Below are positions 6,972 to 57,421 of a stretch of 64,000 nt of DNA, in pieces (within the stretch, counting starts at the first letter, position 1; every line of letters begins with the position of its first letter). The position numbers were made by a program, and so were the translations under genes. This stretch comes from Octopus sinensis (Eukaryota): the NCBI RefSeq assembly GCF_006345805.1, contig NC_043017.1, positions 17,360,001 to 17,424,000 of the forward strand, read 5' to 3'. Below the pieces are notes generated by a model, which saw only the letters and a program-made list of their open reading frames with translations, was not told where the DNA came from and made no database searches.

Positions 6972-7370
6972 TCTTTTATCTTTTACTTGTTTCAGTCATT
7001 AGACTACGGTCATGCTGGGGCAACGCTTTGAAGAATTTGTAGTCGAATGAATCGACAACTCTTCCTATTTTAATTGTAAATCTAAGCTTATTTTATCTGT
7101 CTCTTTAGCTGAACAACTGGATTATGGGGACGTGAAAATACCAACACCGGTTGTCAAGCGGTGTTGGTAGGACAAGAGAGACGACACCCACACACCCACC
7201 TACACACAACATGTATGCGACGGGCTTCTTTCAGTTTCTGTTTACCAAATTCACACACAAGGCTTCGATTAACCTAAGTTTATAGAAGACACTTGCCCAA
7301 GGTGCCGTACAGCGGGACTGACCCCGGATCCACGTGGTTGGGAAGCAAGCTTCTTGCTACACAACCACTC
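6972..7370 (-). mobile_element. SINE family B, complete layout (tRNA-like head, microsatellite, tail)
   Basis: On the minus strand the head gtggttgtgtagcaagaagcttgcttcccaaccacgtgg is followed by a GT-rich spacer and the tail. It contains an uninterrupted AAGAAGCTTGCTTCC at 7341-7355. Confidence 0.8.
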
Positions 7371-7868
7371 TGTTAACATTAATTTAACTTCAATTTGTTT
7401 TGCATTACCATAGTACCGACACAGCGTGAGTTATCAATAAATATGACATCACTCATTACTGTTGAGTGTAACTCGAAAATGGAATTTGAGTGACAAGTTG
7501 AGTGTTAAGTAGAGATGAAGTATCAAGTTACATTGTTCAAATATTTACTTCCATCTCTACAGTTTCATGTTAAGTAGCAGATGAATAATAATGATAAGGA
7601 TTCAAATCGCGGGACGGCTGGGGGTGTCTTTTGCATATGTGTTTATGTATTGGTAGCGATTGGAATGACGATAACACTGTATACATTGCAGTCATTCCTT
7701 CACGTGTAAAAGATGTGTTCGCGAGCGCGTGTATGTATGTATGTTTGTATGTATATATACATAAATACATATATACATACATAAATGCATACATACACAC
7801 ACACTCACGCACACACACACACACCACACACACACACAAACCACACACAAACAACATACATATGTATA

Positions 7869-7915: not shown

Positions 7916-8077
7916 TGCAGGAGTGGCTGTGTAGTAAGAAGCTTGCTTACCAACCACATGGTCCGAATTCAGTCTCACTGTATGGCATCTTCGGCAAGTG
8001 TCTTCTACTAAAGCTTCGGGCCGATTAAAGCCTTGTGAACGGATTTGGTAGACGGTAACTGAAAGAAGCCTGTCGTA
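7914..8077 (+). mobile_element. SINE family B head
   Basis: ggtgcaggagtggctgtgtagtaagaagcttgcttaccaaccacatggtccgaattcagtctc has an A/B-box-like tRNA head and follows a (TA)n run. Confidence 0.8.
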
Positions 8078-37919: not shown

Positions 37920-38502
37920 ATTCATGAAGACGGAGGAGAAAAGAGAGGAAGAAAAGAAAAACGGAGGAAAGGAGGAAGAATGGGTATTAACAGAGGGTAG
38001 AAGGAAGAAGATGAAGACAAGAAAGAACATAGAGTGTGATGTGGTACCCCAGTCCAACTCCATTCCACCCAAGACCACTCAGATCCACCCTCCCCATACA
38101 GACACCAAACCCACCCACCCCATTTCCGCACAAGAAAAGAGAAAAAGAAAAAAACAGACACCACAAAATGTAGAAGACCCACTCCCGGTGAAAAATGTCA
38201 CGTCTACATGGAGGCGAGTGTGTTGTCACTCAGCGATGGGGAAAGTGAGAAAAGAACTGGACTAGAAGCTAAAGAGGACTTAGGACTCAGAGGCAGCGAG
38301 TGGTGTTACTCAGTGGTGTTTCATATTTCATTTTCAAGATATCGTTTATGTTATCAGAACTATAATATTTTGATTTTTCCATGTACATTTTCATGTCACT
38401 CATTGTATCATATTTTATTTTTATATATTTTTTAATTGATATGTCCCCACATGTTTTGTAATGTCTCCTCTATGTTATGCCTATGTGGCAAATTCTGAAA
38501 TA
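37920..38502 (+). mobile_element. 5'-truncated ORF1-only retroposon (family of the 53.6/55.1 kb copies)
   Basis: Encodes EEEW..EGRRKKMKTRKNIECDVVPQSNSIPPKTTQIHPPHTDT, matching the C-terminus at 55532-56368, and has the same 3' UTR ending tgcc-tatgt-ggca...gaaata. Confidence 0.85.
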
Positions 38503-38977
38503 AAGTCGCTTGCTTACCAGAAACGGTAGAGCTGCCCAATGGAGGGAAGCTGGAGATAGTGTTGGACGGAAGGCTCCCTAGCTGCTGTTCTTGCGAGGAG
38601 AGGGGACATATTAAGAAAGGATGCCCGAAACAAGTGAAGGAGGTTGCTGAGATGAAGGCGCGAAACATTGAAGCAGAGGAGGAGCACACAACCAAAACAC
38701 GGAACTGGTTACAGATGAAGAGTTTACAGAGGTAGAATCAAAGAAGGAGAGGAGAAGTTCACCGCCCAAGGAGGAACTACAGCAGAAACAACACGATGCA
38801 GGAAGCAGAAGCATATTCAACGAAAGAAGCATCAGTAACAAGCAGAGGTAATGTTCCTGCAGTTTCACCAAAAAGGAACATCAAAAACAGAACTAAATCA
38901 CCAAGCAAACATACGGACGCACAAGACACACAACACGGTGAAAACAGAAACAGAAACAACATATATTTGATAACATA

Positions 38978-39388
38978 AGGCGGCGAGCTGGCAGAATCGT
39001 TAGCACGCCGAGCGAAATGCGTAGCCGTATTTCGTCTGCCGTTACGTTCTGAGTTCAAATCCCGCCGAGGTCGACTTTGCCTTTCATCCTTTCGGAGTCG
39101 ATAAATTAAATACCAGTTACGCACTGGGGTCGATGTAATCGACTTAATCCGTTTGTCTGTCTTTGTCCTCTCTGTGTTTAGCCCCTTGTGGGTAGTAAAG
39201 AAATACGTATTTCGTCTGTCGTTACGTTCCGAGTTCAAATTCCGCCGAGGTCGATTTTGCCTTTCATCCTTTCGGGGTCGATAAATTAAGTACCAGTCAC
39301 GCACTGGGGTCGATGTAATCGACTTAATCCGTTTGTCTGTCCTTGTTTGTCTCCTCTGTGTTTAGCCCCTTGTGGGTAGTAAAGAAAT
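38978..39388 (+). mobile_element. SINE family A with internal partial duplication and 17-bp TSD
   Basis: Full SINE (38978-39205) plus a head-less repeat (39206-39388). TSD atatatttgataacata at 38961-38977 and 39389-39405. Confidence 0.9.
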
Positions 39389-39664
39389 ATATATTTGATA
39401 ACATACTGTGCAGGTCCAAAAATTGAAAAGAAAATATGTAAAATGAAAAATATTACAAGGGTTAAGCTAACAGAGGGATGTGATAGGAACATGAAATGTA
39501 TTTTGACAGAGGAAGGAAAATAGAGAACATTAAAAGAAACATTTCCATTGGAAGTGAACCCACTAGGGCTGGAGGTGAGAAATGAACCCCGTCCGCCAGT
39601 GGTAGATTCTGAGGATATTAAACAAGACATAAAATGGGTAAGTAAAAAGTATTGTGAAATAACG

Positions 39665-41293
39665 ACGTAGGTTGTGTTTTTTTCGGCTCGTGAAATTTGT
39701 AAAAAAGAACAAAAAGTAAGTGGGAAAATTGTTGTTGTTGTGGAATTTTGTACGTTTGTTGATACGGTTTCGTGTTTCTGTTCGGGCGGCCGTTTTCGGT
39801 CTGCCAGACAGGAGGATATGGACGACCCCTCCCTGATGGGAGAGACGTCTAGAGTTTTTGGGTCTCTATCAGACTTGTCTACGTCCGAGGAGGAACTAGA
39901 AGAAGCAGTGAGGAAAATGGATCAGAAGCTGGGTTATACCTGTGCCGGTGTGACCAAGAAGGCGGAAGAGAAAGGGGTGGACTTGGCCAAGCTGCCAAGT
40001 TTCCAGAAATATATGAAGAAGGACAGCGGTGAGGTCGAACTAGCACCGACACCCAAGAGAAAAGAATGGTACGAGAAAAGGACAATCACATACAGGGTAT
40101 ACGCAAGCGGAAAGAGAAAGATAGAAGTGGTGAACATGGAGTGGATAGAGGAGGCGCTAAGAAGAACGGAAGAGGAAATTAATTTTCTGACGAGAGGTTC
40201 AAAATATGGTACTGTGGTAGTACAGTTCAAAAGTGAGAATGCAGCAAGGAAGATGGCGGCGAAGTCGGTGAAATCCGAGAAGGTAATATTTTTGCCTACA
40301 TATTTAAATAGAAAAATTACAAGAGTAAGGGTCGAGGGAATACCCCCAAACGTCGAAGCCGAGTGGATTGTGGCGGCTATAATCAGCAGCCCCGAGGATG
40401 AAGTGGACATCCTCCATGCCTCGGTTAAGACCGAGGGCTGGAGAGATGTGACAGTGGAACTAAATGTGCAGGCAGAGGATGATGTACTGGTGGACCTAGC
40501 AGAAAACATCAGATTGGGAGACGTAATCATGAGAGTGTGGGTGGAGGGCAGAGCTCCACGTTGTTACAAGTGTGGCCTGAGGGGTCACATAAGAGCTTAC
40601 TGCCCTCCCCCAGTGAAAGAAATGGATTCCGAGCCACAAAGAGAGGAGGAAAAAGAACAGAAACCAGAGGAAGAAAATTCACAAGAATGGGAAGAAGCCA
40701 GGAAAAAGAGGAAGAGGAGAATAAGAGGAAAAGAAAACAACATGGAACCCCAATCCACCCCAACACCACCCACACCCTCTGAGTCCCACCCTCTCCCTGC
40801 AGACAGTGAACCCACCCGCTCCCCTCCAACAAGAAAACAGAAAAGAAAAGACACACAAAACCAAAACACAAAAAATGAACCCAGGCCAAACATTGTATGT
40901 ATGACGGGAAAAGAAAAGATTAAAAAGAAAATGGAAGAGTATCAATGGTGTGACAGAGGAAAGATCAGGTATGCAGTAATTGGAAAAGGACGAATGGACG
41001 AGTTTATGGAAATGTGTGAAAGGGAGGATTGGGAAGTAATCATGAGGGATTTGGAAGAGACGTTTGAAAAAAGGATGGAGATGGAAGGATTTTGTATAGG
41101 AACGGAACAAGGAACATTTGTGTGGGATTAACAACTAAAGGACAGGTAAGTGATGTTAGCGGATGGGGCCGTTAGCATCACTTTCATAATATCATTTTCA
41201 AAATCCATCTTTCATTCTTGTAATTGTGATGTTCTATGTCCCCAATGTTTGTAGTGTCCCCTCTGTGTGGCCCCTCGTGGGTAATAAAGAATC
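39665..41293 (+). mobile_element. Full-length ORF1-only non-LTR retroposon (1629 bp) with 18-bp TSD
   Basis: TSD aagtattgtgaaataacg at 39647-39664 and 41294-41311. One long ORF, ~160-bp 3' UTR, no RT or endonuclease. Confidence 0.9.
39818..41131 (+). CDS. Intact LINE ORF1p/gag-like nucleic-acid-binding protein (437 aa from the first ATG)
   Basis: Acidic N-terminal motif SDLSTSEEELEEAV, an RRM-like region (GTVVVQF; ITRVRVEGIPP), zinc knuckle RCYKCGLRGHIRAYCP, and basic/Pro-rich C-terminus. The ORF track starts upstream at a non-ATG codon. Confidence 0.85.
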   Translation: MDDPSLMGETSRVFGSLSDLSTSEEELEEAVRKMDQKLGYTCAGVTKKAEEKGVDLAKLPSFQKYMKKDSGEVELAPTPKRKEWYEKRTITYRVYASGKRKIEVVNMEWIEEALRRTEEEINFLTRGSKYGTVVVQFKSENAARKMAAKSVKSEKVIFLPTYLNRKITRVRVEGIPPNVEAEWIVAAIISSPEDEVDILHASVKTEGWRDVTVELNVQAEDDVLVDLAENIRLGDVIMRVWVEGRAPRCYKCGLRGHIRAYCPPPVKEMDSEPQREEEKEQKPEEENSQEWEEARKKRKRRIRGKENNMEPQSTPTPPTPSESHPLPADSEPTRSPPTRKQKRKDTQNQNTKNEPRPNIVCMTGKEKIKKKMEEYQWCDRGKIRYAVIGKGRMDEFMEMCEREDWEVIMRDLEETFEKRMEMEGFCIGTEQGTFVWD

Positions 41294-41625
41294 AAGTATT
41301 GTGAAATAACGGTTTTAAAAATTTGGGAAAAAAGAGAAAACCGTGAATGGATAATGAACATTTTAAAAGGAAAGAGAAATCTTGTAAAACATTTGAAATA
41401 ATTGTAAAAACGTAACAGGCCAGGAGTGGCCGTCTAATTCTCATTTGTATAAATCCATATCATTCATTTTTCATGTGAAATGTCTTCGTGATGCATTGTG
41501 GGTAAAAATAAATTAGCATCGTGGATAATAAAAACCAAGCCTATAAGTGTAAATTTTTTATAGACGAGTAAGGCACACAAAGAACCAAACCAGCAGAGAA
41601 GTGCTAATATACGGAACGAACAAAA

Positions 41626-42273
41626 ATGGTCCTTAAAGGTATTCTAGCGTTGGTCTTCAACCAGTTATGTCTTACAGCTAATTGTGTTATTATTGCTTCA
41701 CCTGACAACGTGAATAACGATAGTGTTCCAGTAATGGCTCTTCTCACGAAGGAACACGACGATTTCTCTGTAGACATTAACGGCAAGAGTTTTGAAAGTA
41801 ACAATACTAACACCGCTGCTAATTTTACTGTGACACCTGCTACTCACAAAACCGAAATTCAACTTTTCTTAGAGCCAACAACGAAGGAACAGACGAAAAA
41901 TTTTTCTGAAAGCAGTACAAAAATGGAACGAACAAAACGCTGGGTGAGATCTGTGCTGATGAAAATTTTCTCGCCCTCTCGTAATTTCACTGATAGAAAT
42001 TATCTTGAAGTAGCTCCTGATAATACAGTTGTTCCTTCAGAAGAGGTTTTCTCTAGTGGTACCGCAGCAATGAGCACAATATCGAATTCTAAGGTGCCAT
42101 TAACCAATATTATGGAATCTTCTGACCAGGAATTGACGACACCTGTATACAACTGGACAACGACTCCAAGAATGAGTCTTAAAAAAGTTGTGACGATTTG
42201 GACCCTCTGTGGAATTAGTATAACTATTCTCATTATAATCCTTTCAGTGTGTTTGTATGCTTTCTGCGGATGA
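41626..42273 (+). CDS. Single-exon membrane-anchored glycoprotein with predicted furin site (215 aa)
   Basis: ATG in caaaaATGG context, hydrophobic N-terminus, 6 N-x-S/T sequons, RTKR|W at mid-protein, C-terminal hydrophobic helix ending CLYAFCG. Paralogue of 47768-48406. Confidence 0.8.
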   Translation: MVLKGILALVFNQLCLTANCVIIASPDNVNNDSVPVMALLTKEHDDFSVDINGKSFESNNTNTAANFTVTPATHKTEIQLFLEPTTKEQTKNFSESSTKMERTKRWVRSVLMKIFSPSRNFTDRNYLEVAPDNTVVPSEEVFSSGTAAMSTISNSKVPLTNIMESSDQELTTPVYNWTTTPRMSLKKVVTIWTLCGISITILIIILSVCLYAFCG

Positions 42274-53531: not shown

Positions 53532-53570
<39 letters not shown>

Positions 53571-53605
53571 CGCAGGCGTGGCTGTGTGGTAAGAAGCTTG
53601 CTTCC

Positions 53606-55051
53606 GGTTACCCATAGTGCATTTGGTTTGTCGTTTGTGTGCGAGTCGGTTTTGTTGCAACGGTAAGACAATGTACTCAGACATTAGCGGGTCTGAGCTG
53701 TCTTCTTCAGAGGAGGAGCTGCTGAGAGCAGTAGAAGGCATGGATGAGTACTTGAGGAAAACGAAGAGTTTCGCAGAGGCTGTGGAGGTGAAGAGAAAAG
53801 AGGTGGATTTATCAAGAATGAAGGAGCATGGAAAAATGGTGCAGAAAGTGGGCGGCAACGTGACGTTGTCACCCCCACAAAGAATAATGGATGGCATAAA
53901 AAGAAGAACCGTCATATACAAAGTTTACTCGATAAAGAGTAAGAAGTTCGACCAAATAGAAATAGAGAAAATAGAAAAGGCAGTAAAGGAGGAATCCAAC
54001 GGAGTAATATACATGACAAGAGGATACCAATATGGGACAATGGTAGTCCAGTTTAGAACAGAGGAGGAGGCAAGGAGGCTGGCGAGCAAAACGGTAAAGA
54101 CGAAGGAAATGGTCCTTCTACCTACGTATCTTGGAAGAAGGACCTCCAAGATAAGGGTAGAAGGAATTCCGCCTGATATAAATGTGGCTTGGGTAGCGGC
54201 AGCTGTCCTTGTTGGAAGCGAGGAGAAGGTGACTGTCCTCCAAGCCACAGAAACAGAAGAAGGAGGGTGGAAAGGAAGAACGCTCGAGTTAATTATTCAG
54301 ACGGAAGAGGGACAACTTGAGAACTTGGCAGAGACTGTGACGCTGGGGGAAATCGTGCTGAGGGTGTGGGTAGAGGGCAGAGTACCACGTTGTTTCAAAT
54401 GTGGCCAAAAGGTCCACATTAGAGCACACTGCCCTCTACGAAGGACTACGGCTGAGGATATAGTTGCGGAGACAGAAGAGAAAAGAGAGGAAGACAAAAT
54501 AGACGGAGGAAACGATAAAAAAGAGGAAGAATGGAAAATTGCAGAGCGCAATGGGAGAAAGAGGAAAAAAAGAAAAGACACTGAGTATGATGTGGCACCC
54601 TAGTCCAACCCCATCCCACCTAAGACCTCTCAGACCCACCCTCCCCATACAGACACCAAACCCACCCAGCCCATTTCCCCTCAAGAAAAAAAGAAAAAAC
54701 AGACACCACAAAATTTAGAAGACCCCCCCTCCCGGTGAAAAAGGTTATGAATGCATGACGGAGAGAATGTTATCATTAAGTGTCAGTGAAAAAGGAAAAG
54801 GATTGGACGAAAAGACAAAAAGGACTCAGGACCCAGAGACAGCGAGTTGTGTTACTCAGTGTGGGGTGAGTAGCACACTCTTTATATTATCATTTTCAGA
54901 TATCAGTCATATTATCATATTTTAATTTGTTCTTCATGTGCATTTTCGTGTTCATTCATTATATCATATTTTATTTTTAATTGTTATATGCCCCCACATG
55001 TGTTGTAGTGTCCCCTCTGTGTATTACCTTTATGGCAAATTTAATAAAATA
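53606..55051 (+). mobile_element. ORF1-only retroposon, stack copy 1
   Basis: Flanked by AAGAAGCTTGCTTCC at 53591-53605 and 55052-55066. Short 5' UTR, ORF1, 3' UTR with stem-loop and A-rich end. Confidence 0.9.
53671..54603 (+). CDS. ORF1p with zinc knuckle, C-terminally truncated (310 aa)
   Basis: MYSDISGSELSSSEEELL...RCFKCGQKVHIRAHCP. The TAG at 54601 corresponds to CAG in the paralogues (VPQSN), so it is a premature stop. Confidence 0.8.
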   Translation: MYSDISGSELSSSEEELLRAVEGMDEYLRKTKSFAEAVEVKRKEVDLSRMKEHGKMVQKVGGNVTLSPPQRIMDGIKRRTVIYKVYSIKSKKFDQIEIEKIEKAVKEESNGVIYMTRGYQYGTMVVQFRTEEEARRLASKTVKTKEMVLLPTYLGRRTSKIRVEGIPPDINVAWVAAAVLVGSEEKVTVLQATETEEGGWKGRTLELIIQTEEGQLENLAETVTLGEIVLRVWVEGRVPRCFKCGQKVHIRAHCPLRRTTAEDIVAETEEKREEDKIDGGNDKKEEEWKIAERNGRKRKKRKDTEYDVAP

Positions 55052-55066
55052 AAGAAGCTTGCTTCC

Positions 55067-56559
55067 GCGCCTGCGTCGAATTATTTGCTGTGTTGAGTTT
55101 TGACGAGGCGGACGGAATCTTTTGGGCTGCTCGCCAGCGGTTTGTTGGCGAGTGTTGTACTAGTGGAAAAGAATGTATTCAGACCTTAGCGAGTATGAAC
55201 TATCCTCATCAGAGGAGGAGCTCGTTAAGGCGGTAAACAGAATGGACGAGCATTTGGAAAGAATAAAAAGTTTTGCTGACGCGGCAGAGGTAAAGAAAAA
55301 GGAAGTAGACCTAACCGAACTGAAGGAGCTGTGTAAGATGACACAGAAGGTGGGAAGTGATGTAAAGTTATTACCCCCGAAAACGGTTATGGTAAATATG
55401 GAAAAGAAGACTATTACCTACAAGGTGCACTCAGTGGAGAGTAGGAGGGTGGAGCAGATGAAGATGGAAAAAGTAGAAAAAGCTCTTCGAAGGAAGTAAG
55501 ATATATAGCAAAAGGAAGCGGATATGGGACGGTGGTTGTCCAGTTTAGGACAGAAGAGGAGGCAAAGAGGCTGGCAAGTACAACTGTAAAAACTGAGGAA
55601 CTAGTACTTCTACCCTCCTATCTTGGAAGAAAGAATTCTAAGGTGAGGGAAGAAGGAATTCCACCTGACATAAAAGTGGCTTGGGTTGCGGCAGCCGTCC
55701 TCGTTGGAAGTGAGGAGGAGGTGACTGTCCTCCAAGCCACAGAGACAGAGGAAGGAAGCTACAGAGGAAAAATACTGGAAATAATAATACAAGCGGAGGC
55801 GAAGGAGCTGGAAAATTTGGCGGAAACGGTGACGATGGGAGAAATAGTATTGAGAGTATGGGTAGAAGGCAGAATCCCGCGATGCTTTAAATGTGGCCAA
55901 AAAGGCCACATTAGAGCACACTGCCCACTACAGAAGAAAAAGATAGAGGAAAAAACAGATGAACCAGTTGTGGAGACGAAGGAGAAAAAAGAGGATAAAA
56001 AGAAAGACGGACGAAAGGAGGAAGAATGGATAGTAGCAGAGAGTAGAAGGAAGAAGAGGAAGAAAAGAAAGAACACTGAGTGTGATATGGTACCCCAGTC
56101 CAACTCCATCCCACCCAAGACCACTCAGACCCACCCGCCCCATACAGACACCAGACCCACCCACACCCTTTCCCCACAAGAAAAAAAGAAAAAGAAAAAA
56201 GAGCAGACACCACAGAATTTAGAAAACCCCTCCCCCGGTGAAAAAGGTTGCGAAAGAATGTTGTCATTAAGCGATAGTGAGAGTGGAAATAGAAGGACTA
56301 GACCAGAGACTAAAGACGAATTCGGACTCAAAGGCAGCGAGTGGTGTTACTCAGTGTGGGGTGAGTAGCACACTCTTCATATTTTCATTTTCAGATATGC
56401 ATGTTATCATAAACTTAATTTATTTTCTCATGTTCATTTTCATTTTCATGTCACTCACAGTATCATTTTATTTTTACATATTCTTAATTGTTATATGTCC
56501 CCACATGTTTTTGTAGTGTCCCCTCTGTGTAATGCCTTTATGGCAAAATAATTGAAATA
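55067..56559 (+). mobile_element. ORF1-only retroposon, stack copy 2
   Basis: Flanked by AAGAAGCTTGCTTCC at 55052-55066 and 56560-56574. Confidence 0.9.
55173..56368 (+). pseudogene. ORF1p split by a frameshift near 55490-55530
   Basis: The two track ORFs (55173-55499 and 55532-56368) align collinearly with the 53671 protein. Knuckle RCFKCGQKGHIRAHCP is intact. Confidence 0.8.
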
Positions 56560-56574
56560 AAGAAGCTTGCTTCC

Positions 56575-56815
56575 GCGCATGCGTCGGGTTATTGCTGTCT
56601 GGATTTTGTAAGAGTCGGGCGTAGTTTTTCGTGTTGCTTAGATGATGTATTCAGACCTTAACGGGTCTGAGTTGTCATCGTCGGAGGAGGAGCTGGTAAG
56701 GGCGGTCATAAAGATGAACGGAGTGTTGAAGACAAGGAGTTGTGCTGAAGTCACCGAGATGAAGTGAAGGGAGCTGGACTTGGCTCAGAAGGTGGGCGGC
56801 GATGTGAATGTGAGT
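56575..56815 (+). mobile_element. ORF1-only retroposon, stack copy 3 (5' stub only)
   Basis: 5' UTR gcgcatgcgtcg resembles copy 2 (gcgcctgcgtcg). Encodes MMYSDLNGSELSSSEEELVRAV...MK* then QKVGGDV; the rest is deleted. Confidence 0.85.
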
Positions 56816-56886: not shown

Positions 56887-57421
56887 CAGGGTGTCCCCAA
56901 AAAATGTATACACACCTTAAATAATTGTAAATTTGGGGTTTATTATAATTCGAATAATTTTCAACATGTAAAAGAATTTACAAATATCATTCTATTGTCT
57001 TGTTATCGCATGTTCTCAAACTGATGTCCGTTCTGCTCCAGACACTGCTGACAACGCGAAGCGATGGAATGGCACACATCATGGAACAATTCCCTTGGGA
57101 TATTCGTACATTCATGTTCAATGGTTGCCCTCAATTGAACGACTGTTGCAGGTTTCTGTGCGTGTACTTTGTCCTTTAGGTATCCCCATAAAAAGAAGTC
57201 TAGTGGTGTGAGGTCTGCTGAACGTGGAGGGTATTCGACAAAACCTCTCCGTCCAATCCACCTGTTTGGCAAGATCCCATCAAGAAAGGATCTAACATCG
57301 CGATGGTAGTGTGGAGGTGCCCCGTCTTGCTGGAAATAAAACTCTTCCTGTTCAAAGTCCTCTCTAATGCTTGGCATGACAGACTGTTGCAGTCTGTGTA
57401 TACATTTTTTGGGACACCCTG
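56887..57421 (-). mobile_element. Internally deleted Tc1/mariner element (535 bp)
   Basis: TIRs cagggtgtccccaaaaaatgtatacaca (56887-56914) and its near-complement (57395-57421). Transposase C-terminus FQQDGAPPHY...YPPRSADLTPLDFFLWGYLKDKV directly abuts one TIR. Confidence 0.9.

What the first reader, a model, noticed from the sequence alone, without database searches (positions are those of the whole stretch)
53569..56815. Three ORF1-only retroposons stacked head-to-tail at one 15-bp site in a SINE head: apparent sequence-specific targeting
The layout is SINE-B head...AAGAAGCTTGCTTCC [copy 1, 1446 bp] AAGAAGCTTGCTTCC [copy 2, 1493 bp] AAGAAGCTTGCTTCC [copy 3 stub], with the 15-mer at 53591, 55052 and 56560. 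The same 15-mer is a normal part of uninterrupted SINE-B (7341-7355, minus). The copies have different 5' UTRs, diverged proteins and different lesions, so this is not a simple tandem duplication. It fits repeated independent insertions regenerating the same TSD, with copy 3 oldest. Target-specific insertion into multicopy RNA genes or repeats is established for Tx1-clade LINEs. A non-autonomous ORF1-only family using a tRNA-derived SINE as its landing pad, a parasite of a parasite, would be new to my knowledge.
Basis: partly seen in the sequence, partly recalled or inferred. Interest (0 to 1): 0.9.

Follow-up and report, generated by a model that had tools for sequence, protein, structure and literature searches.

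The report
Retroposons stacked at one octopus SINE site
Three diverged copies of a small gag-only (ORF1-only) octopus retroposon sit head-to-tail, each separated by the same 15-bp piece of a SINE, which is best read as repeated site-directed insertion; this pattern is already known for other retroposon families that target transposons, so it is a new example rather than a new principle.

Summary
AAGAAGCTTGCTTCC occurs exactly at 53591, 55052 and 56560. It delimits units of 1446 and 1493 bp plus a 240-bp stub, directly after a genuine 22-nt SINE-B 5' end.

The units are real retroposons. Relatives in this window and in two other octopus genomes are 0.9-1.6 kb, carry one ORF and have 13-18-bp target-site duplications. 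The ORF is predicted as tandem RRMs plus a CCHC knuckle, with no room for a reverse transcriptase.

The stack is not a local duplication. Copies 1 and 2 are 75% identical with dN/dS 0.15. Copies 2 and 3 each have a closer relative elsewhere (83% and 79% amino-acid identity, against 55-65% within the stack). All three 15-mers are nevertheless identical.

A fourth clade member, at 37.9-38.5 kb, is followed at the same junction by a variant SINE-B 15-mer. More distant relatives sit at other sites, one of them in another SINE's head.

Best reading: sequential, site-directed insertions that regenerate their own target. The Tx1 assignment and the insertion order are untested. The "parasite of a parasite" novelty claim is overstated: Tx1-Mar/SINEU-3 stacks in a Mariner transposon are published. 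The evidence amounts to one array plus one junction.

The parts
53535..53568 (.). (TA)n microsatellite, the usual 5' flank of SINE-B copies
   Evidence: Sequence read. The same (TA)n-to-GGCGCAGG junction occurs at SINE-B copies 7936, 19710 and 60505.
53569..53590 (+). SINE-B head, first 22 nt (GGCGCAGGCGTGGCTGTGTGGT), including the A-box-like TGGCTGTGTGG
   Evidence: Aligns in register with nine other SINE-B copies from the window and L001.
53591..53605 (+). 15-mer X1 (AAGAAGCTTGCTTCC), SINE-B positions 23-37; upstream copy of the target-site duplication
53606..55051 (+). Copy 1 (1446 bp). Its ORF at 53671-54603 (310 aa) ends at a stop where copy 2 and c38 read on. The 3' UTR carries the conserved block TGTAGTGTCCCCTCTGTGT and ends ...AATAAAATA.
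55052..55066 (+). 15-mer X2, identical to X1
55067..56559 (+). Copy 2 (1493 bp). It starts GCGCCTGCGTCG. A 10-bp deletion splits the ORF into 55173-55499 and 55532-56368. It ends ...TTGAAATA.
   Evidence: Its N-terminus is 83% identical to P0009, a protein encoded elsewhere.
56560..56574 (+). 15-mer X3, identical to X1 and X2
56575..56815 (+). Copy 3 stub. It starts GCGCATGCGTCG. It holds the first ~57 codons with one stop and a 27-bp deletion, and is cut off at its 3' side.
   Evidence: It is 79% identical to the N-terminus of P0002, an O. bimaculoides gene model.
37925..38502 (+). c38, a 5'-truncated fourth member of the same clade (80.5% identical to copy 2)
38503..38519 (+). AAGTCGCTTGCTTACCA, a variant SINE-B 15-mer plus the next two SINE-B bases. 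It abuts the c38 3' end at exactly the boundary seen in the array.
   Evidence: Compare SINE-B 7936 (AAGAAGCTTGCTTACCA) and L001 19146 (AAGTAGCTTGCTTACCA).
38514..41525 (+). cX, a 5'-truncated distant family member joined to the variant 15-mer through TTACCA microhomology. It carries two nested insertions, a SINE-A dimer and c40. No 15-mer follows its 3' end. The end coordinate is approximate.
39665..41293 (+). c40, a distant subfamily member (1629 bp) with an intact 437-aa ORF at 39818-41131. It is flanked by a perfect 18-bp TSD, AAGTATTGTGAAATAACG (39647-39664 and 41294-41311), and is not in a SINE head.
7100..7375 (-). Reference uninterrupted SINE-B carrying the exact 15-mer at 7341-7355

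Best explanation
The array records at least three separate retrotransposition events. Three already-diverged lineages of a non-autonomous, ORF1-only non-LTR retroposon clade each entered the same 15-bp site (positions 23-37) of one tRNA-derived SINE-B head. In the proposed mechanism, an unidentified partner LINE supplies endonuclease and reverse transcriptase in trans. It nicks the bottom strand at GGT|AAGAAG and the top strand 15 nt downstream. Target-primed reverse transcription then duplicates the 15-mer, so each insertion regenerates an intact target next to itself and further insertions stack head-to-tail.

Shown here: the anatomy, the TSD-type mobility of the family, the independent origin of the stacked copies, and a second occurrence of the same element/SINE-B junction.

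Inferred: trans-mobilisation, the nick positions, and that the preference comes from the partner's endonuclease or from RNA-target pairing rather than from something peculiar to this locus.
For: 1. Three exact 15-mers bound the units, and the first is in register with a genuine SINE-B 5' end.
2. The family moves like a LINE-dependent retroposon. c40 has an 18-bp perfect TSD. The O. sinensis relative in L001 has an 18-bp TSD with both halves of the host SINE-A present. The O. bimaculoides relative in L002 has a 13-bp TSD. c38 and cX are 5'-truncated. No copy has a poly(A) tail. A conserved 3' block is present, and the last ~38 nt of c40 match SINE-A tails at 82-87%.
3. The TSD-delimited units are 0.9-1.6 kb with one ORF. 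The AlphaFold model (pLDDT 63) matches tandem-RRM proteins (Foldseek E ~1e-4), followed by CxxCxxxxHxxxxC. Pfam zf-CCHC hits homologues. None of the ten longer homologues scanned (341-1135 aa) is fused to an RT or EN domain.
4. The copies originated independently. Copy 1 versus 2 gives dN/dS 0.15, pS 0.61 and codon-position differences of 0.17/0.17/0.45. Copy 2 is closest to c38 (80.5%), not to its neighbours. Copy 2 versus P0009 is 83% and copy 3 versus P0002 is 79%, against 55-65% among the stacked copies.
5. The three 15-mers show 0 differences in 45 nt, while the adjacent 3' UTRs are only 80% identical. This is expected for young TSDs and not for a co-diverging terminal sequence (0.8^15 is about 0.035 per pair, my arithmetic).
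6. c38 is followed at the same boundary by a variant SINE-B 15-mer plus CA. The chance of up to 2 mismatches in 15 nt at a fixed position is about 1e-6 (my arithmetic).
7. There is published precedent for this exact pattern (PMC4494074).
Against: - Only one array and one further junction could be examined. About 105 kb of octopus DNA was available, and all other look-ups failed.
- Three more distant relatives lie at unrelated sites or in a different SINE, so any specificity is confined to one clade or is a preference rather than a rule.
- Twelve other SINE-B heads in the sample are unoccupied. With SINE-B this abundant, three hits on one copy need an extra explanation, such as a preference for already-occupied sites.
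- The SINE-B body expected after copy 3 is not recognisable.
- c38 lacks the SINE-B head on its 5' side, and cX lacks the 15-mer at its 3' end. That locus is rearranged and could also reflect 3' transduction.
- No autonomous partner was found.
Confidence: 0.65

Rival explanations
1. Occupancy-driven stacking without real SINE specificity. The first insertion landed in this SINE-B head by chance or through weak A-rich microhomology. Later RNAs were then drawn to the 3' junction of the resident copy, for example by pairing of the RNA 3' tail with the identical tail DNA next to the nick, or by locally open chromatin.
For: Distant relatives insert elsewhere. TSDs of this family and of a SINE-A begin with A-rich sequence (AAGAAG, AGAAAC, AAGTAT, ACACAA, ATATAT), which fits loose microhomology with the ...AAAGAAAT/AAATA 3' ends. 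Three hits on one of very many SINE-B copies is easier to explain if occupied sites attract insertions. A second cluster of nested or stacked family members lies at 37.9-41.5 kb.
Against: c38 (or its parent) sat at the same position in a different SINE-B copy, shown by its variant 15-mer. That is not expected from a chance first hit (about 1e-4 per insertion given SINE-B density, my estimate). Both boundaries of the 15-mer are reused exactly, three times.
Confidence: 0.15
2. The 15-mer is carried by the RNA rather than duplicated from the target. It could be a 3' transduction tag from a master copy sitting in a SINE-B: AAUAAA lies at the element's end, so cleavage about 15-17 nt downstream, after CA, would include it. 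Alternatively it could be a clade-specific terminal sequence. Arrays would then arise by RT template jumping between RNAs, or by pairing of the carried 15-mer with SINE-B targets.
For: An AATAAA/AAATAAA sits directly at the 3' end of copies 1, 2 and c38. In c38 the SINE-B-derived flank ends exactly after CA and is joined to non-SINE sequence (cX) through TTACCA microhomology. The copy 1 terminus plus the start of the 15-mer (AAATAAAGAAGC) resembles the intrinsic ends of c40 and L001 (AATAAAGAATC, AAATAAAGAAATC).
Against: The three 15-mers are identical while the neighbouring 3' UTRs differ by 20%. Relatives (L002, c40, L001) have neither end bounded by it. No poly(A) follows it. The first 15-mer is continuous with a genuine SINE-B head preceded by the usual (TA)n, so at least that copy belongs to the target. 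This variant would still imply homing to SINE-B.
Confidence: 0.12
3. Local tandem duplication or unequal crossing-over of an [element + 15-mer] unit, followed by divergence in place.
For: Head-to-tail layout with a constant spacer.
Against: dN/dS is 0.15 with 45% third-position differences, so divergence occurred under protein-level selection, yet all three ORFs are now broken. Copies 2 and 3 have much closer relatives elsewhere than in the stack. The spacers are identical although the units are 25-33% diverged. The 5' UTRs differ in length (65, 106 and 70 nt).
Confidence: 0.03

Closest known systems
Tx1-Mar LINEs and their non-autonomous partner SINEU-3 in crocodilians (Kojima 2015, PMC4494074)
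   Same: A non-autonomous retroposon is inserted at one specific sequence inside another, abundant transposon (Mariner-N4_AMi, 11,801 copies) with a constant ~16-bp TSD. Tandem insertions "sandwiching a TSD" are interpreted there as sequential insertions.
   Different: There the target is a DNA transposon and the passenger is a non-coding snRNA-derived SINE whose partner's RT is placed in the Tx1 clade. Here the target is a tRNA-derived SINE head, the passenger encodes an ORF1-type protein, the host is an octopus and the partner is unknown.
Tx1L inserting into Tx1D (Xenopus), and other Tx1-clade target-specific families such as Keno (U2), Dewa, and Kibi/Koshi (microsatellites)
   Same: Sequence-specific TPRT into multicopy sequences, including another mobile element (PMC4494074).
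   Different: Those elements are autonomous, with ORF2 EN/RT. Clade membership cannot be tested here.
HAL1 (half-L1) and other non-autonomous LINE derivatives (Bao and Jurka 2010, cited in PMC4494074); Drosophila HeT-A (from my own knowledge)
   Same: Non-LTR elements that keep an ORF1/gag-type gene, lack ORF2, and depend on a partner's RT.
   Different: HAL1 is not target-specific. HeT-A targets chromosome ends. No homology with either was tested.
Type I LINE ORF1 proteins (RRM(s) directly upstream of a CCHC knuckle; Khazina and Weichenrieder classes as summarised in PMC4120745 and PMC5203782)
   Same: Predicted tandem RRM folds followed by one CCHC knuckle and a basic tail.
   Different: No significant Pfam match for the window proteins. 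There is one knuckle rather than the three typical of Jockey. This layout occurs in many clades, so it does not identify the partner.

Membership tests
LINE-dependent (TPRT) non-autonomous retroposon, ORF1-only type | Copies flanked by target-site duplications of variable length and sequence | tested here: met
   18 bp for c40, 18 bp for L001, 13 bp with 12/13 matching for L002, and 15 bp for copies 1 and 2.
LINE-dependent (TPRT) non-autonomous retroposon, ORF1-only type | 5'-truncated copies with intact 3' ends; no LTRs or TIRs | tested here: met
   c38 starts at about position 905 of the unit. cX starts inside the ORF.
LINE-dependent (TPRT) non-autonomous retroposon, ORF1-only type | No reverse transcriptase or endonuclease inside the mobile unit | tested here: met
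   TSD-bounded units are 898-1629 bp with one ORF of about 310-437 aa. Pfam finds no RT/EN in the window ORFs or in ten longer homologues.
LINE-dependent (TPRT) non-autonomous retroposon, ORF1-only type | 3' tail shared with an autonomous LINE partner | not testable with these tools
   No RT-bearing element with this tail exists in the 105 kb available. The tail is shared with SINE-A (82-87% over ~38 nt), which suggests a common partner.
Type I LINE ORF1p | [quoted passage not shown] | tested here: inconclusive
   The model (mean pLDDT 63.4) gives Foldseek hits to tandem-RRM proteins at E ~1e-4 but with low TM (~0.2). The CxxCxxxxHxxxxC columns are invariant. zf-CCHC is below the Pfam cut-off in c40 and above it in P0013 and P0103.
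Target-specific non-LTR retroposons | Most independent copies lie at the same target sequence with the same junctions | tested here: inconclusive
   In the copy 1/2/3/c38 clade, 4 of 4 junctions lie at SINE-B position 22/23. For more distant relatives the count is 0 of 3. The sample is far too small.
Target-specific non-LTR retroposons | Tandem insertions separated by exactly one TSD | tested here: met
   Same pattern as SINEU-3.
Tx1 clade | RT/APE of the autonomous element groups with Tx1 in phylogeny | not testable with these tools
   No partner was found. The ORF1 layout is not clade-diagnostic (PMC4120745).
Tandem gene or segmental duplication | Neighbouring units are each other's closest relatives and diverged neutrally in place | tested here: not met

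The most novel reading that the evidence does not exclude
Octopods harbour a LINE system whose integration machinery recognises a defined site in the tRNA-like head of an abundant SINE. Several diverged ORF1-only lineages exploit it, using the SINE as a very high-copy safe harbour that each insertion regenerates. A distant relative (L001) hit a similar AGAA-C-TT-GC motif in another SINE's head, so the preference may extend to tRNA-like heads in general. This would be the first SINE-targeting retroposon system and the first target-specific LINE system described in cephalopods.
Probability: 0.4. Interest if true: 0.6.

Novelty: new variant of a known kind. Interest (0 to 1): 0.5.

Why it matters
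If a genome-wide census confirms it, cephalopods would join the few lineages known to have target-specific non-LTR retroposons. It would also show that a SINE head can serve as the landing pad. It would give a natural system for asking how an APE-type endonuclease, or RNA-target pairing, reads a 15-bp site. It would explain some head-to-tail retroposon arrays in the very repeat-rich octopus genomes. It also shows how SINE-head-plus-LINE-tail junctions, the raw material for new composite SINEs, arise. In practice, several public octopus gene models (for example A0A0L8GU38, LOC118767527 and LOC106871568) appear to be copies or chimeras of this element family.

Tried and rejected
- Obtaining more octopus copies. 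Three word-index protein searches returned only six family proteins. Two of them had contigs on record, giving L001 and L002. Look-ups of P0001-P0003 and of three window ORFs found nothing.
- Representative-library hits. The search found 866 family proteins from O. vulgaris, O. sinensis, O. bimaculoides and Argonauta.
- Collection scans. Two metagenome scans and one viral-contig scan gave nothing, or only chance 20-mer hits in gut bacteria.
- Pfam on ten other long window ORFs returned nothing.
- A conserved RNA structure in the last 90 nt was sought; RNAalifold predicts none, only a conserved sequence block.
- The SINE-B body downstream of copy 3 was sought; only a weak TA-rich match was found.
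- I considered that c38 inserted into cX at a look-alike site. No cX sequence is detectable upstream of c38, and the 17-nt flank matches SINE-B variants too well. The order of events at that locus remains unresolved.
- I considered that the SINE-A and SINE-B insertion points are homologous tRNA positions. A-box alignment places them 8 nt apart unless an indel is assumed. I kept this only as a suggestion.
- The sequence profile against PDB matched only retroviral-type CCHC knuckles.
Full report
OBSERVATION

The window is octopus DNA. Every protein homologue of the element comes from Octopus bimaculoides, O. sinensis, O. vulgaris or Argonauta hians.

The 15-mer AAGAAGCTTGCTTCC occurs exactly at 53591, 55052 and 56560 on the + strand. 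Allowing two mismatches there are nine matches in the window against 0.10 expected by shuffling.

The 22 nt before the first 15-mer (53569-53590, GGCGCAGGCGTGGCTGTGTGGT) are the normal 5' end of that SINE. They are preceded by the (TA)n tract that also precedes other copies.

One point could not be confirmed. The SINE-B body expected to the right of the stub is not recognisable, apart from a short TA-rich resemblance to a SINE-B tail. A deletion must have removed the rest of copy 3 and most of the SINE.

WHAT THE UNITS ARE

Each unit has a short 5' UTR, one ORF, and a 3' UTR of roughly 200-450 nt. The 3' UTR ends in ...AAATA without a poly(A) tail.

Relatives with clean boundaries show that this small unit is the whole mobile element.
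- In the window, a distant subfamily member (c40, 39665-41293, intact 437-aa ORF) is flanked by a perfect 18-bp duplication, AAGTATTGTGAAATAACG.
- In O. sinensis (L001), a relative of 1599 bp is flanked by AGAAA[C/T]GTTAGCACGCCG. It sits in the head of a different SINE (SINE-A), and both halves of that SINE are present on either side.
- In O. bimaculoides (L002), an internally deleted relative is flanked by ACACAAC[A/C]CAGTT in non-SINE DNA.

Two copies in the window (c38, cX) are 5'-truncated. Variable TSDs of 13-18 bp, 5' truncation, and the absence of terminal repeats are the marks of target-primed reverse transcription.

There is no room for a reverse transcriptase in the unit. None was detected in the window ORFs or in the ten longer homologues scanned (341-1135 aa).

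The protein is predicted as two RRM-like folds, followed by an invariant CxxCxxxxHxxxxC knuckle and a basic tail. The model is only moderately confident (pLDDT 63). Its Foldseek matches to tandem-RRM proteins have E ~1e-4 but low TM-scores. This is the "Type I" LINE ORF1 layout, which occurs in many LINE clades (PMC4120745, PMC5203782).

The last ~38 nt of c40 match the tails of SINE-A copies at 82-87%. A sequence block (TATGTCCCCA..TGTAGTGTCCCCTCTGTGT) is conserved in all 3' UTRs, without a predicted conserved fold. This fits trans-mobilisation by a "stringent" LINE partner that recognises the tail. No such partner could be found in the DNA available. "ORF1-only non-autonomous retroposon" is therefore well supported.

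IS THE STACK A LOCAL DUPLICATION?

No, for three reasons.
- Copies 1 and 2 are 75% identical, 2 and 3 are 70%, and 1 and 3 are 67%. Copy 2 is closer (80.5%) to c38, 17 kb away.
- Between copies 1 and 2, dN/dS is 0.15 and codon-position differences are 0.17/0.17/0.45. They therefore diverged while the protein was under selection, not as dead neighbours. All three ORFs are now broken in different ways.
- Over the N-terminal ~105 residues, copy 2 is 83% identical to P0009 and copy 3 is 79% identical to P0002. Both proteins are encoded at other loci. Within the stack the figures are 55-65%.

Three distinct lineages are thus represented.

IS THE 15-MER A TSD OR PART OF THE ELEMENT?

The three 15-mers have no difference in 45 nt, while the adjacent 3' UTRs of copies 1 and 2 are only 80% identical. 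The termini of L002, c40 and L001 lack the 15-mer. The first 15-mer is continuous with a genuine SINE-B head. The conserved 5' terminus ...TGCGTCG of copies 2, 3 and L002 begins directly after the 15-mer or after the TSD. A young, regenerated target-site duplication is the simplest reading.

SECOND JUNCTION

c38 (37925-38502) ends ...GAAATA and is followed by AAGTCGCTTGCTTACCA (38503-38519). That is a SINE-B 15-mer of the ...TTAC variant plus the next two SINE-B bases. The same variant is seen in uninterrupted copies at 7936 and at L001 19146. The boundary is the same as in the array.

The 15-mer there differs from the array's, so c38, or the copy it was transcribed from, sat in a different SINE-B.

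This locus is rearranged. There is no SINE head upstream of c38. The 17-mer is joined through TTACCA microhomology to a 5'-truncated distant family member (cX), and cX's own 3' end is not followed by the 15-mer. Two readings remain open:
- cX stacked onto c38 with loss of target DNA.
- A c38 RNA carried 17 nt of SINE-B flank (AAUAAA sits at the element's end and the flank stops after CA) and inserted into cX.

LIMITS ON "SPECIFICITY"

Within the copy 1/2/3/c38 clade, all four observable junctions are at the same SINE-B position. The three more distant relatives are elsewhere.

The L001 insertion begins at GGC|AGAAACGTTAGC in a SINE-A head. This loosely resembles GGT|AAGAAGCTTGC (9 of 12 columns matching with two gaps, my comparison) and is only suggestive.

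Twelve other SINE-B heads in the roughly 105 kb examined are empty. SINE-B is very abundant, so three hits on one copy call for something more than recognition of the 15-mer. Candidates are a preference for occupied sites, open chromatin, or a much higher occupancy genome-wide than this sample shows.

COMPARISON WITH WHAT IS KNOWN

Kojima (2015, PMC4494074) describes the same anatomy. Tx1-Mar LINEs and the non-autonomous SINEU-3 insert into one site of the DNA transposon Mariner-N4_AMi with a ~16-bp TSD. In that study 90% of 347 near-full-length SINEU-3 copies are flanked by the transposon. Tandem copies "sandwiching a TSD" are explained there as sequential insertions.

Tx1 itself targets the transposon Tx1D. 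Other Tx1 families target LTR elements and Harbinger transposons. ORF1-retaining non-autonomous LINE derivatives are also known (HAL1, cited there; HeT-A from my own knowledge).

"A parasite of a parasite" is therefore not new. What I did not find described in five literature searches is a SINE head as the target, an ORF1-coding passenger with such targeting, or any target-specific retroposon in cephalopods.

Assignment to the Tx1 clade is untested. "Copy 3 oldest" is plausible, since it carries the most lesions per length, but it is unproven: defective RNAs can be mobilised in trans, and any of the 15-mers can receive the next insertion.

VERDICT

Tandem duplication is rejected. Sequential site-directed insertion is the best explanation (about 0.65). 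The rivals are occupancy-driven stacking (0.15) and an RNA-borne 15-mer (0.12). This is a new variant of a known kind, resting on one array and one extra junction. A genome-wide flank census would settle it.

Noticed in passing
window 39665-41293 (TSDs 39647-39664 and 41294-41311): A distant subfamily member has an intact 437-aa ORF and a perfect 18-bp TSD, so it looks young and possibly still mobile. It is nested in the 3' region of the older element cX.
   Followed up: partly
window 38978-39388 (TSDs 38961-38977 and 39389-39405): A SINE-A dimer is flanked by a 17-bp TSD, ATATATTTGATAACATA, and is also nested in cX. Its tail (..CCTCTGTGTTTAGCCCCTTGTGGGTAGTAAAGAAAT) matches the c40 tail, which implies a shared LINE partner.
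   Followed up: partly
L001 9440-11074 (O. sinensis CM016880.1): An ORF1-only relative lies inside a SINE-A head with an 18-bp TSD and both SINE halves intact. NCBI annotates part of its ORF as LOC118767527.
   Followed up: yes
window 56888-57420 (perfect TIRs at 56896-56914 and 57395-57413): A short mariner/Tc1-like remnant with perfect 19-bp inverted ends lies immediately right of the array. Its minus-strand ORF contains ...FQQDGAPPHY.... Pfam gave no hit at E<=0.01.
   Followed up: partly
window 54604-54850 versus 56095-56368: After copy 1's stop codon, the region that is still coding in copy 2, c38, c40 and L001 is more conserved between copies 1 and 2. It shows no third-position excess (0.19/0.11/0.17). 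This suggests constraint at the nucleotide level or a different selective regime for the proline/threonine-rich tail.
   Followed up: no
window 54862-54900, 56364-56400, 41146-41200; L001 10900-10950: A conserved intron-like motif (GGTRAGY ... TCATTTTCAG) occurs in the 3' UTRs. In c40 and L001 it overlaps an imperfect 12-13-bp hairpin (GTGATGTTAGCGG/CCGTTAGCATCAC). Its significance is unknown.
   Followed up: no
window 53591-53605: The 15-mer contains the inverted repeat GAAGC-TT-GCTTC and a HindIII palindrome (AAGCTT). The L001 TSD contains AACGTT at the corresponding place. This may be relevant to recognition or may simply be a tRNA stem remnant.
   Followed up: no
proteins P0002 (A0A0L8GU38), P0037, P0043: Public gene models fuse fragments of this ORF to C2H2 zinc fingers, a Helitron/PIF1 helicase or LDL-receptor repeats. 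These are probably annotation chimeras caused by element insertions.
   Followed up: partly
window 41626-42273: A 215-aa ATG ORF has a hydrophobic N-terminus and a C-terminal membrane-like segment. It has no Pfam match and is not on record as a called gene. It may be a real single-exon gene next to the retroposon cluster.
   Followed up: partly
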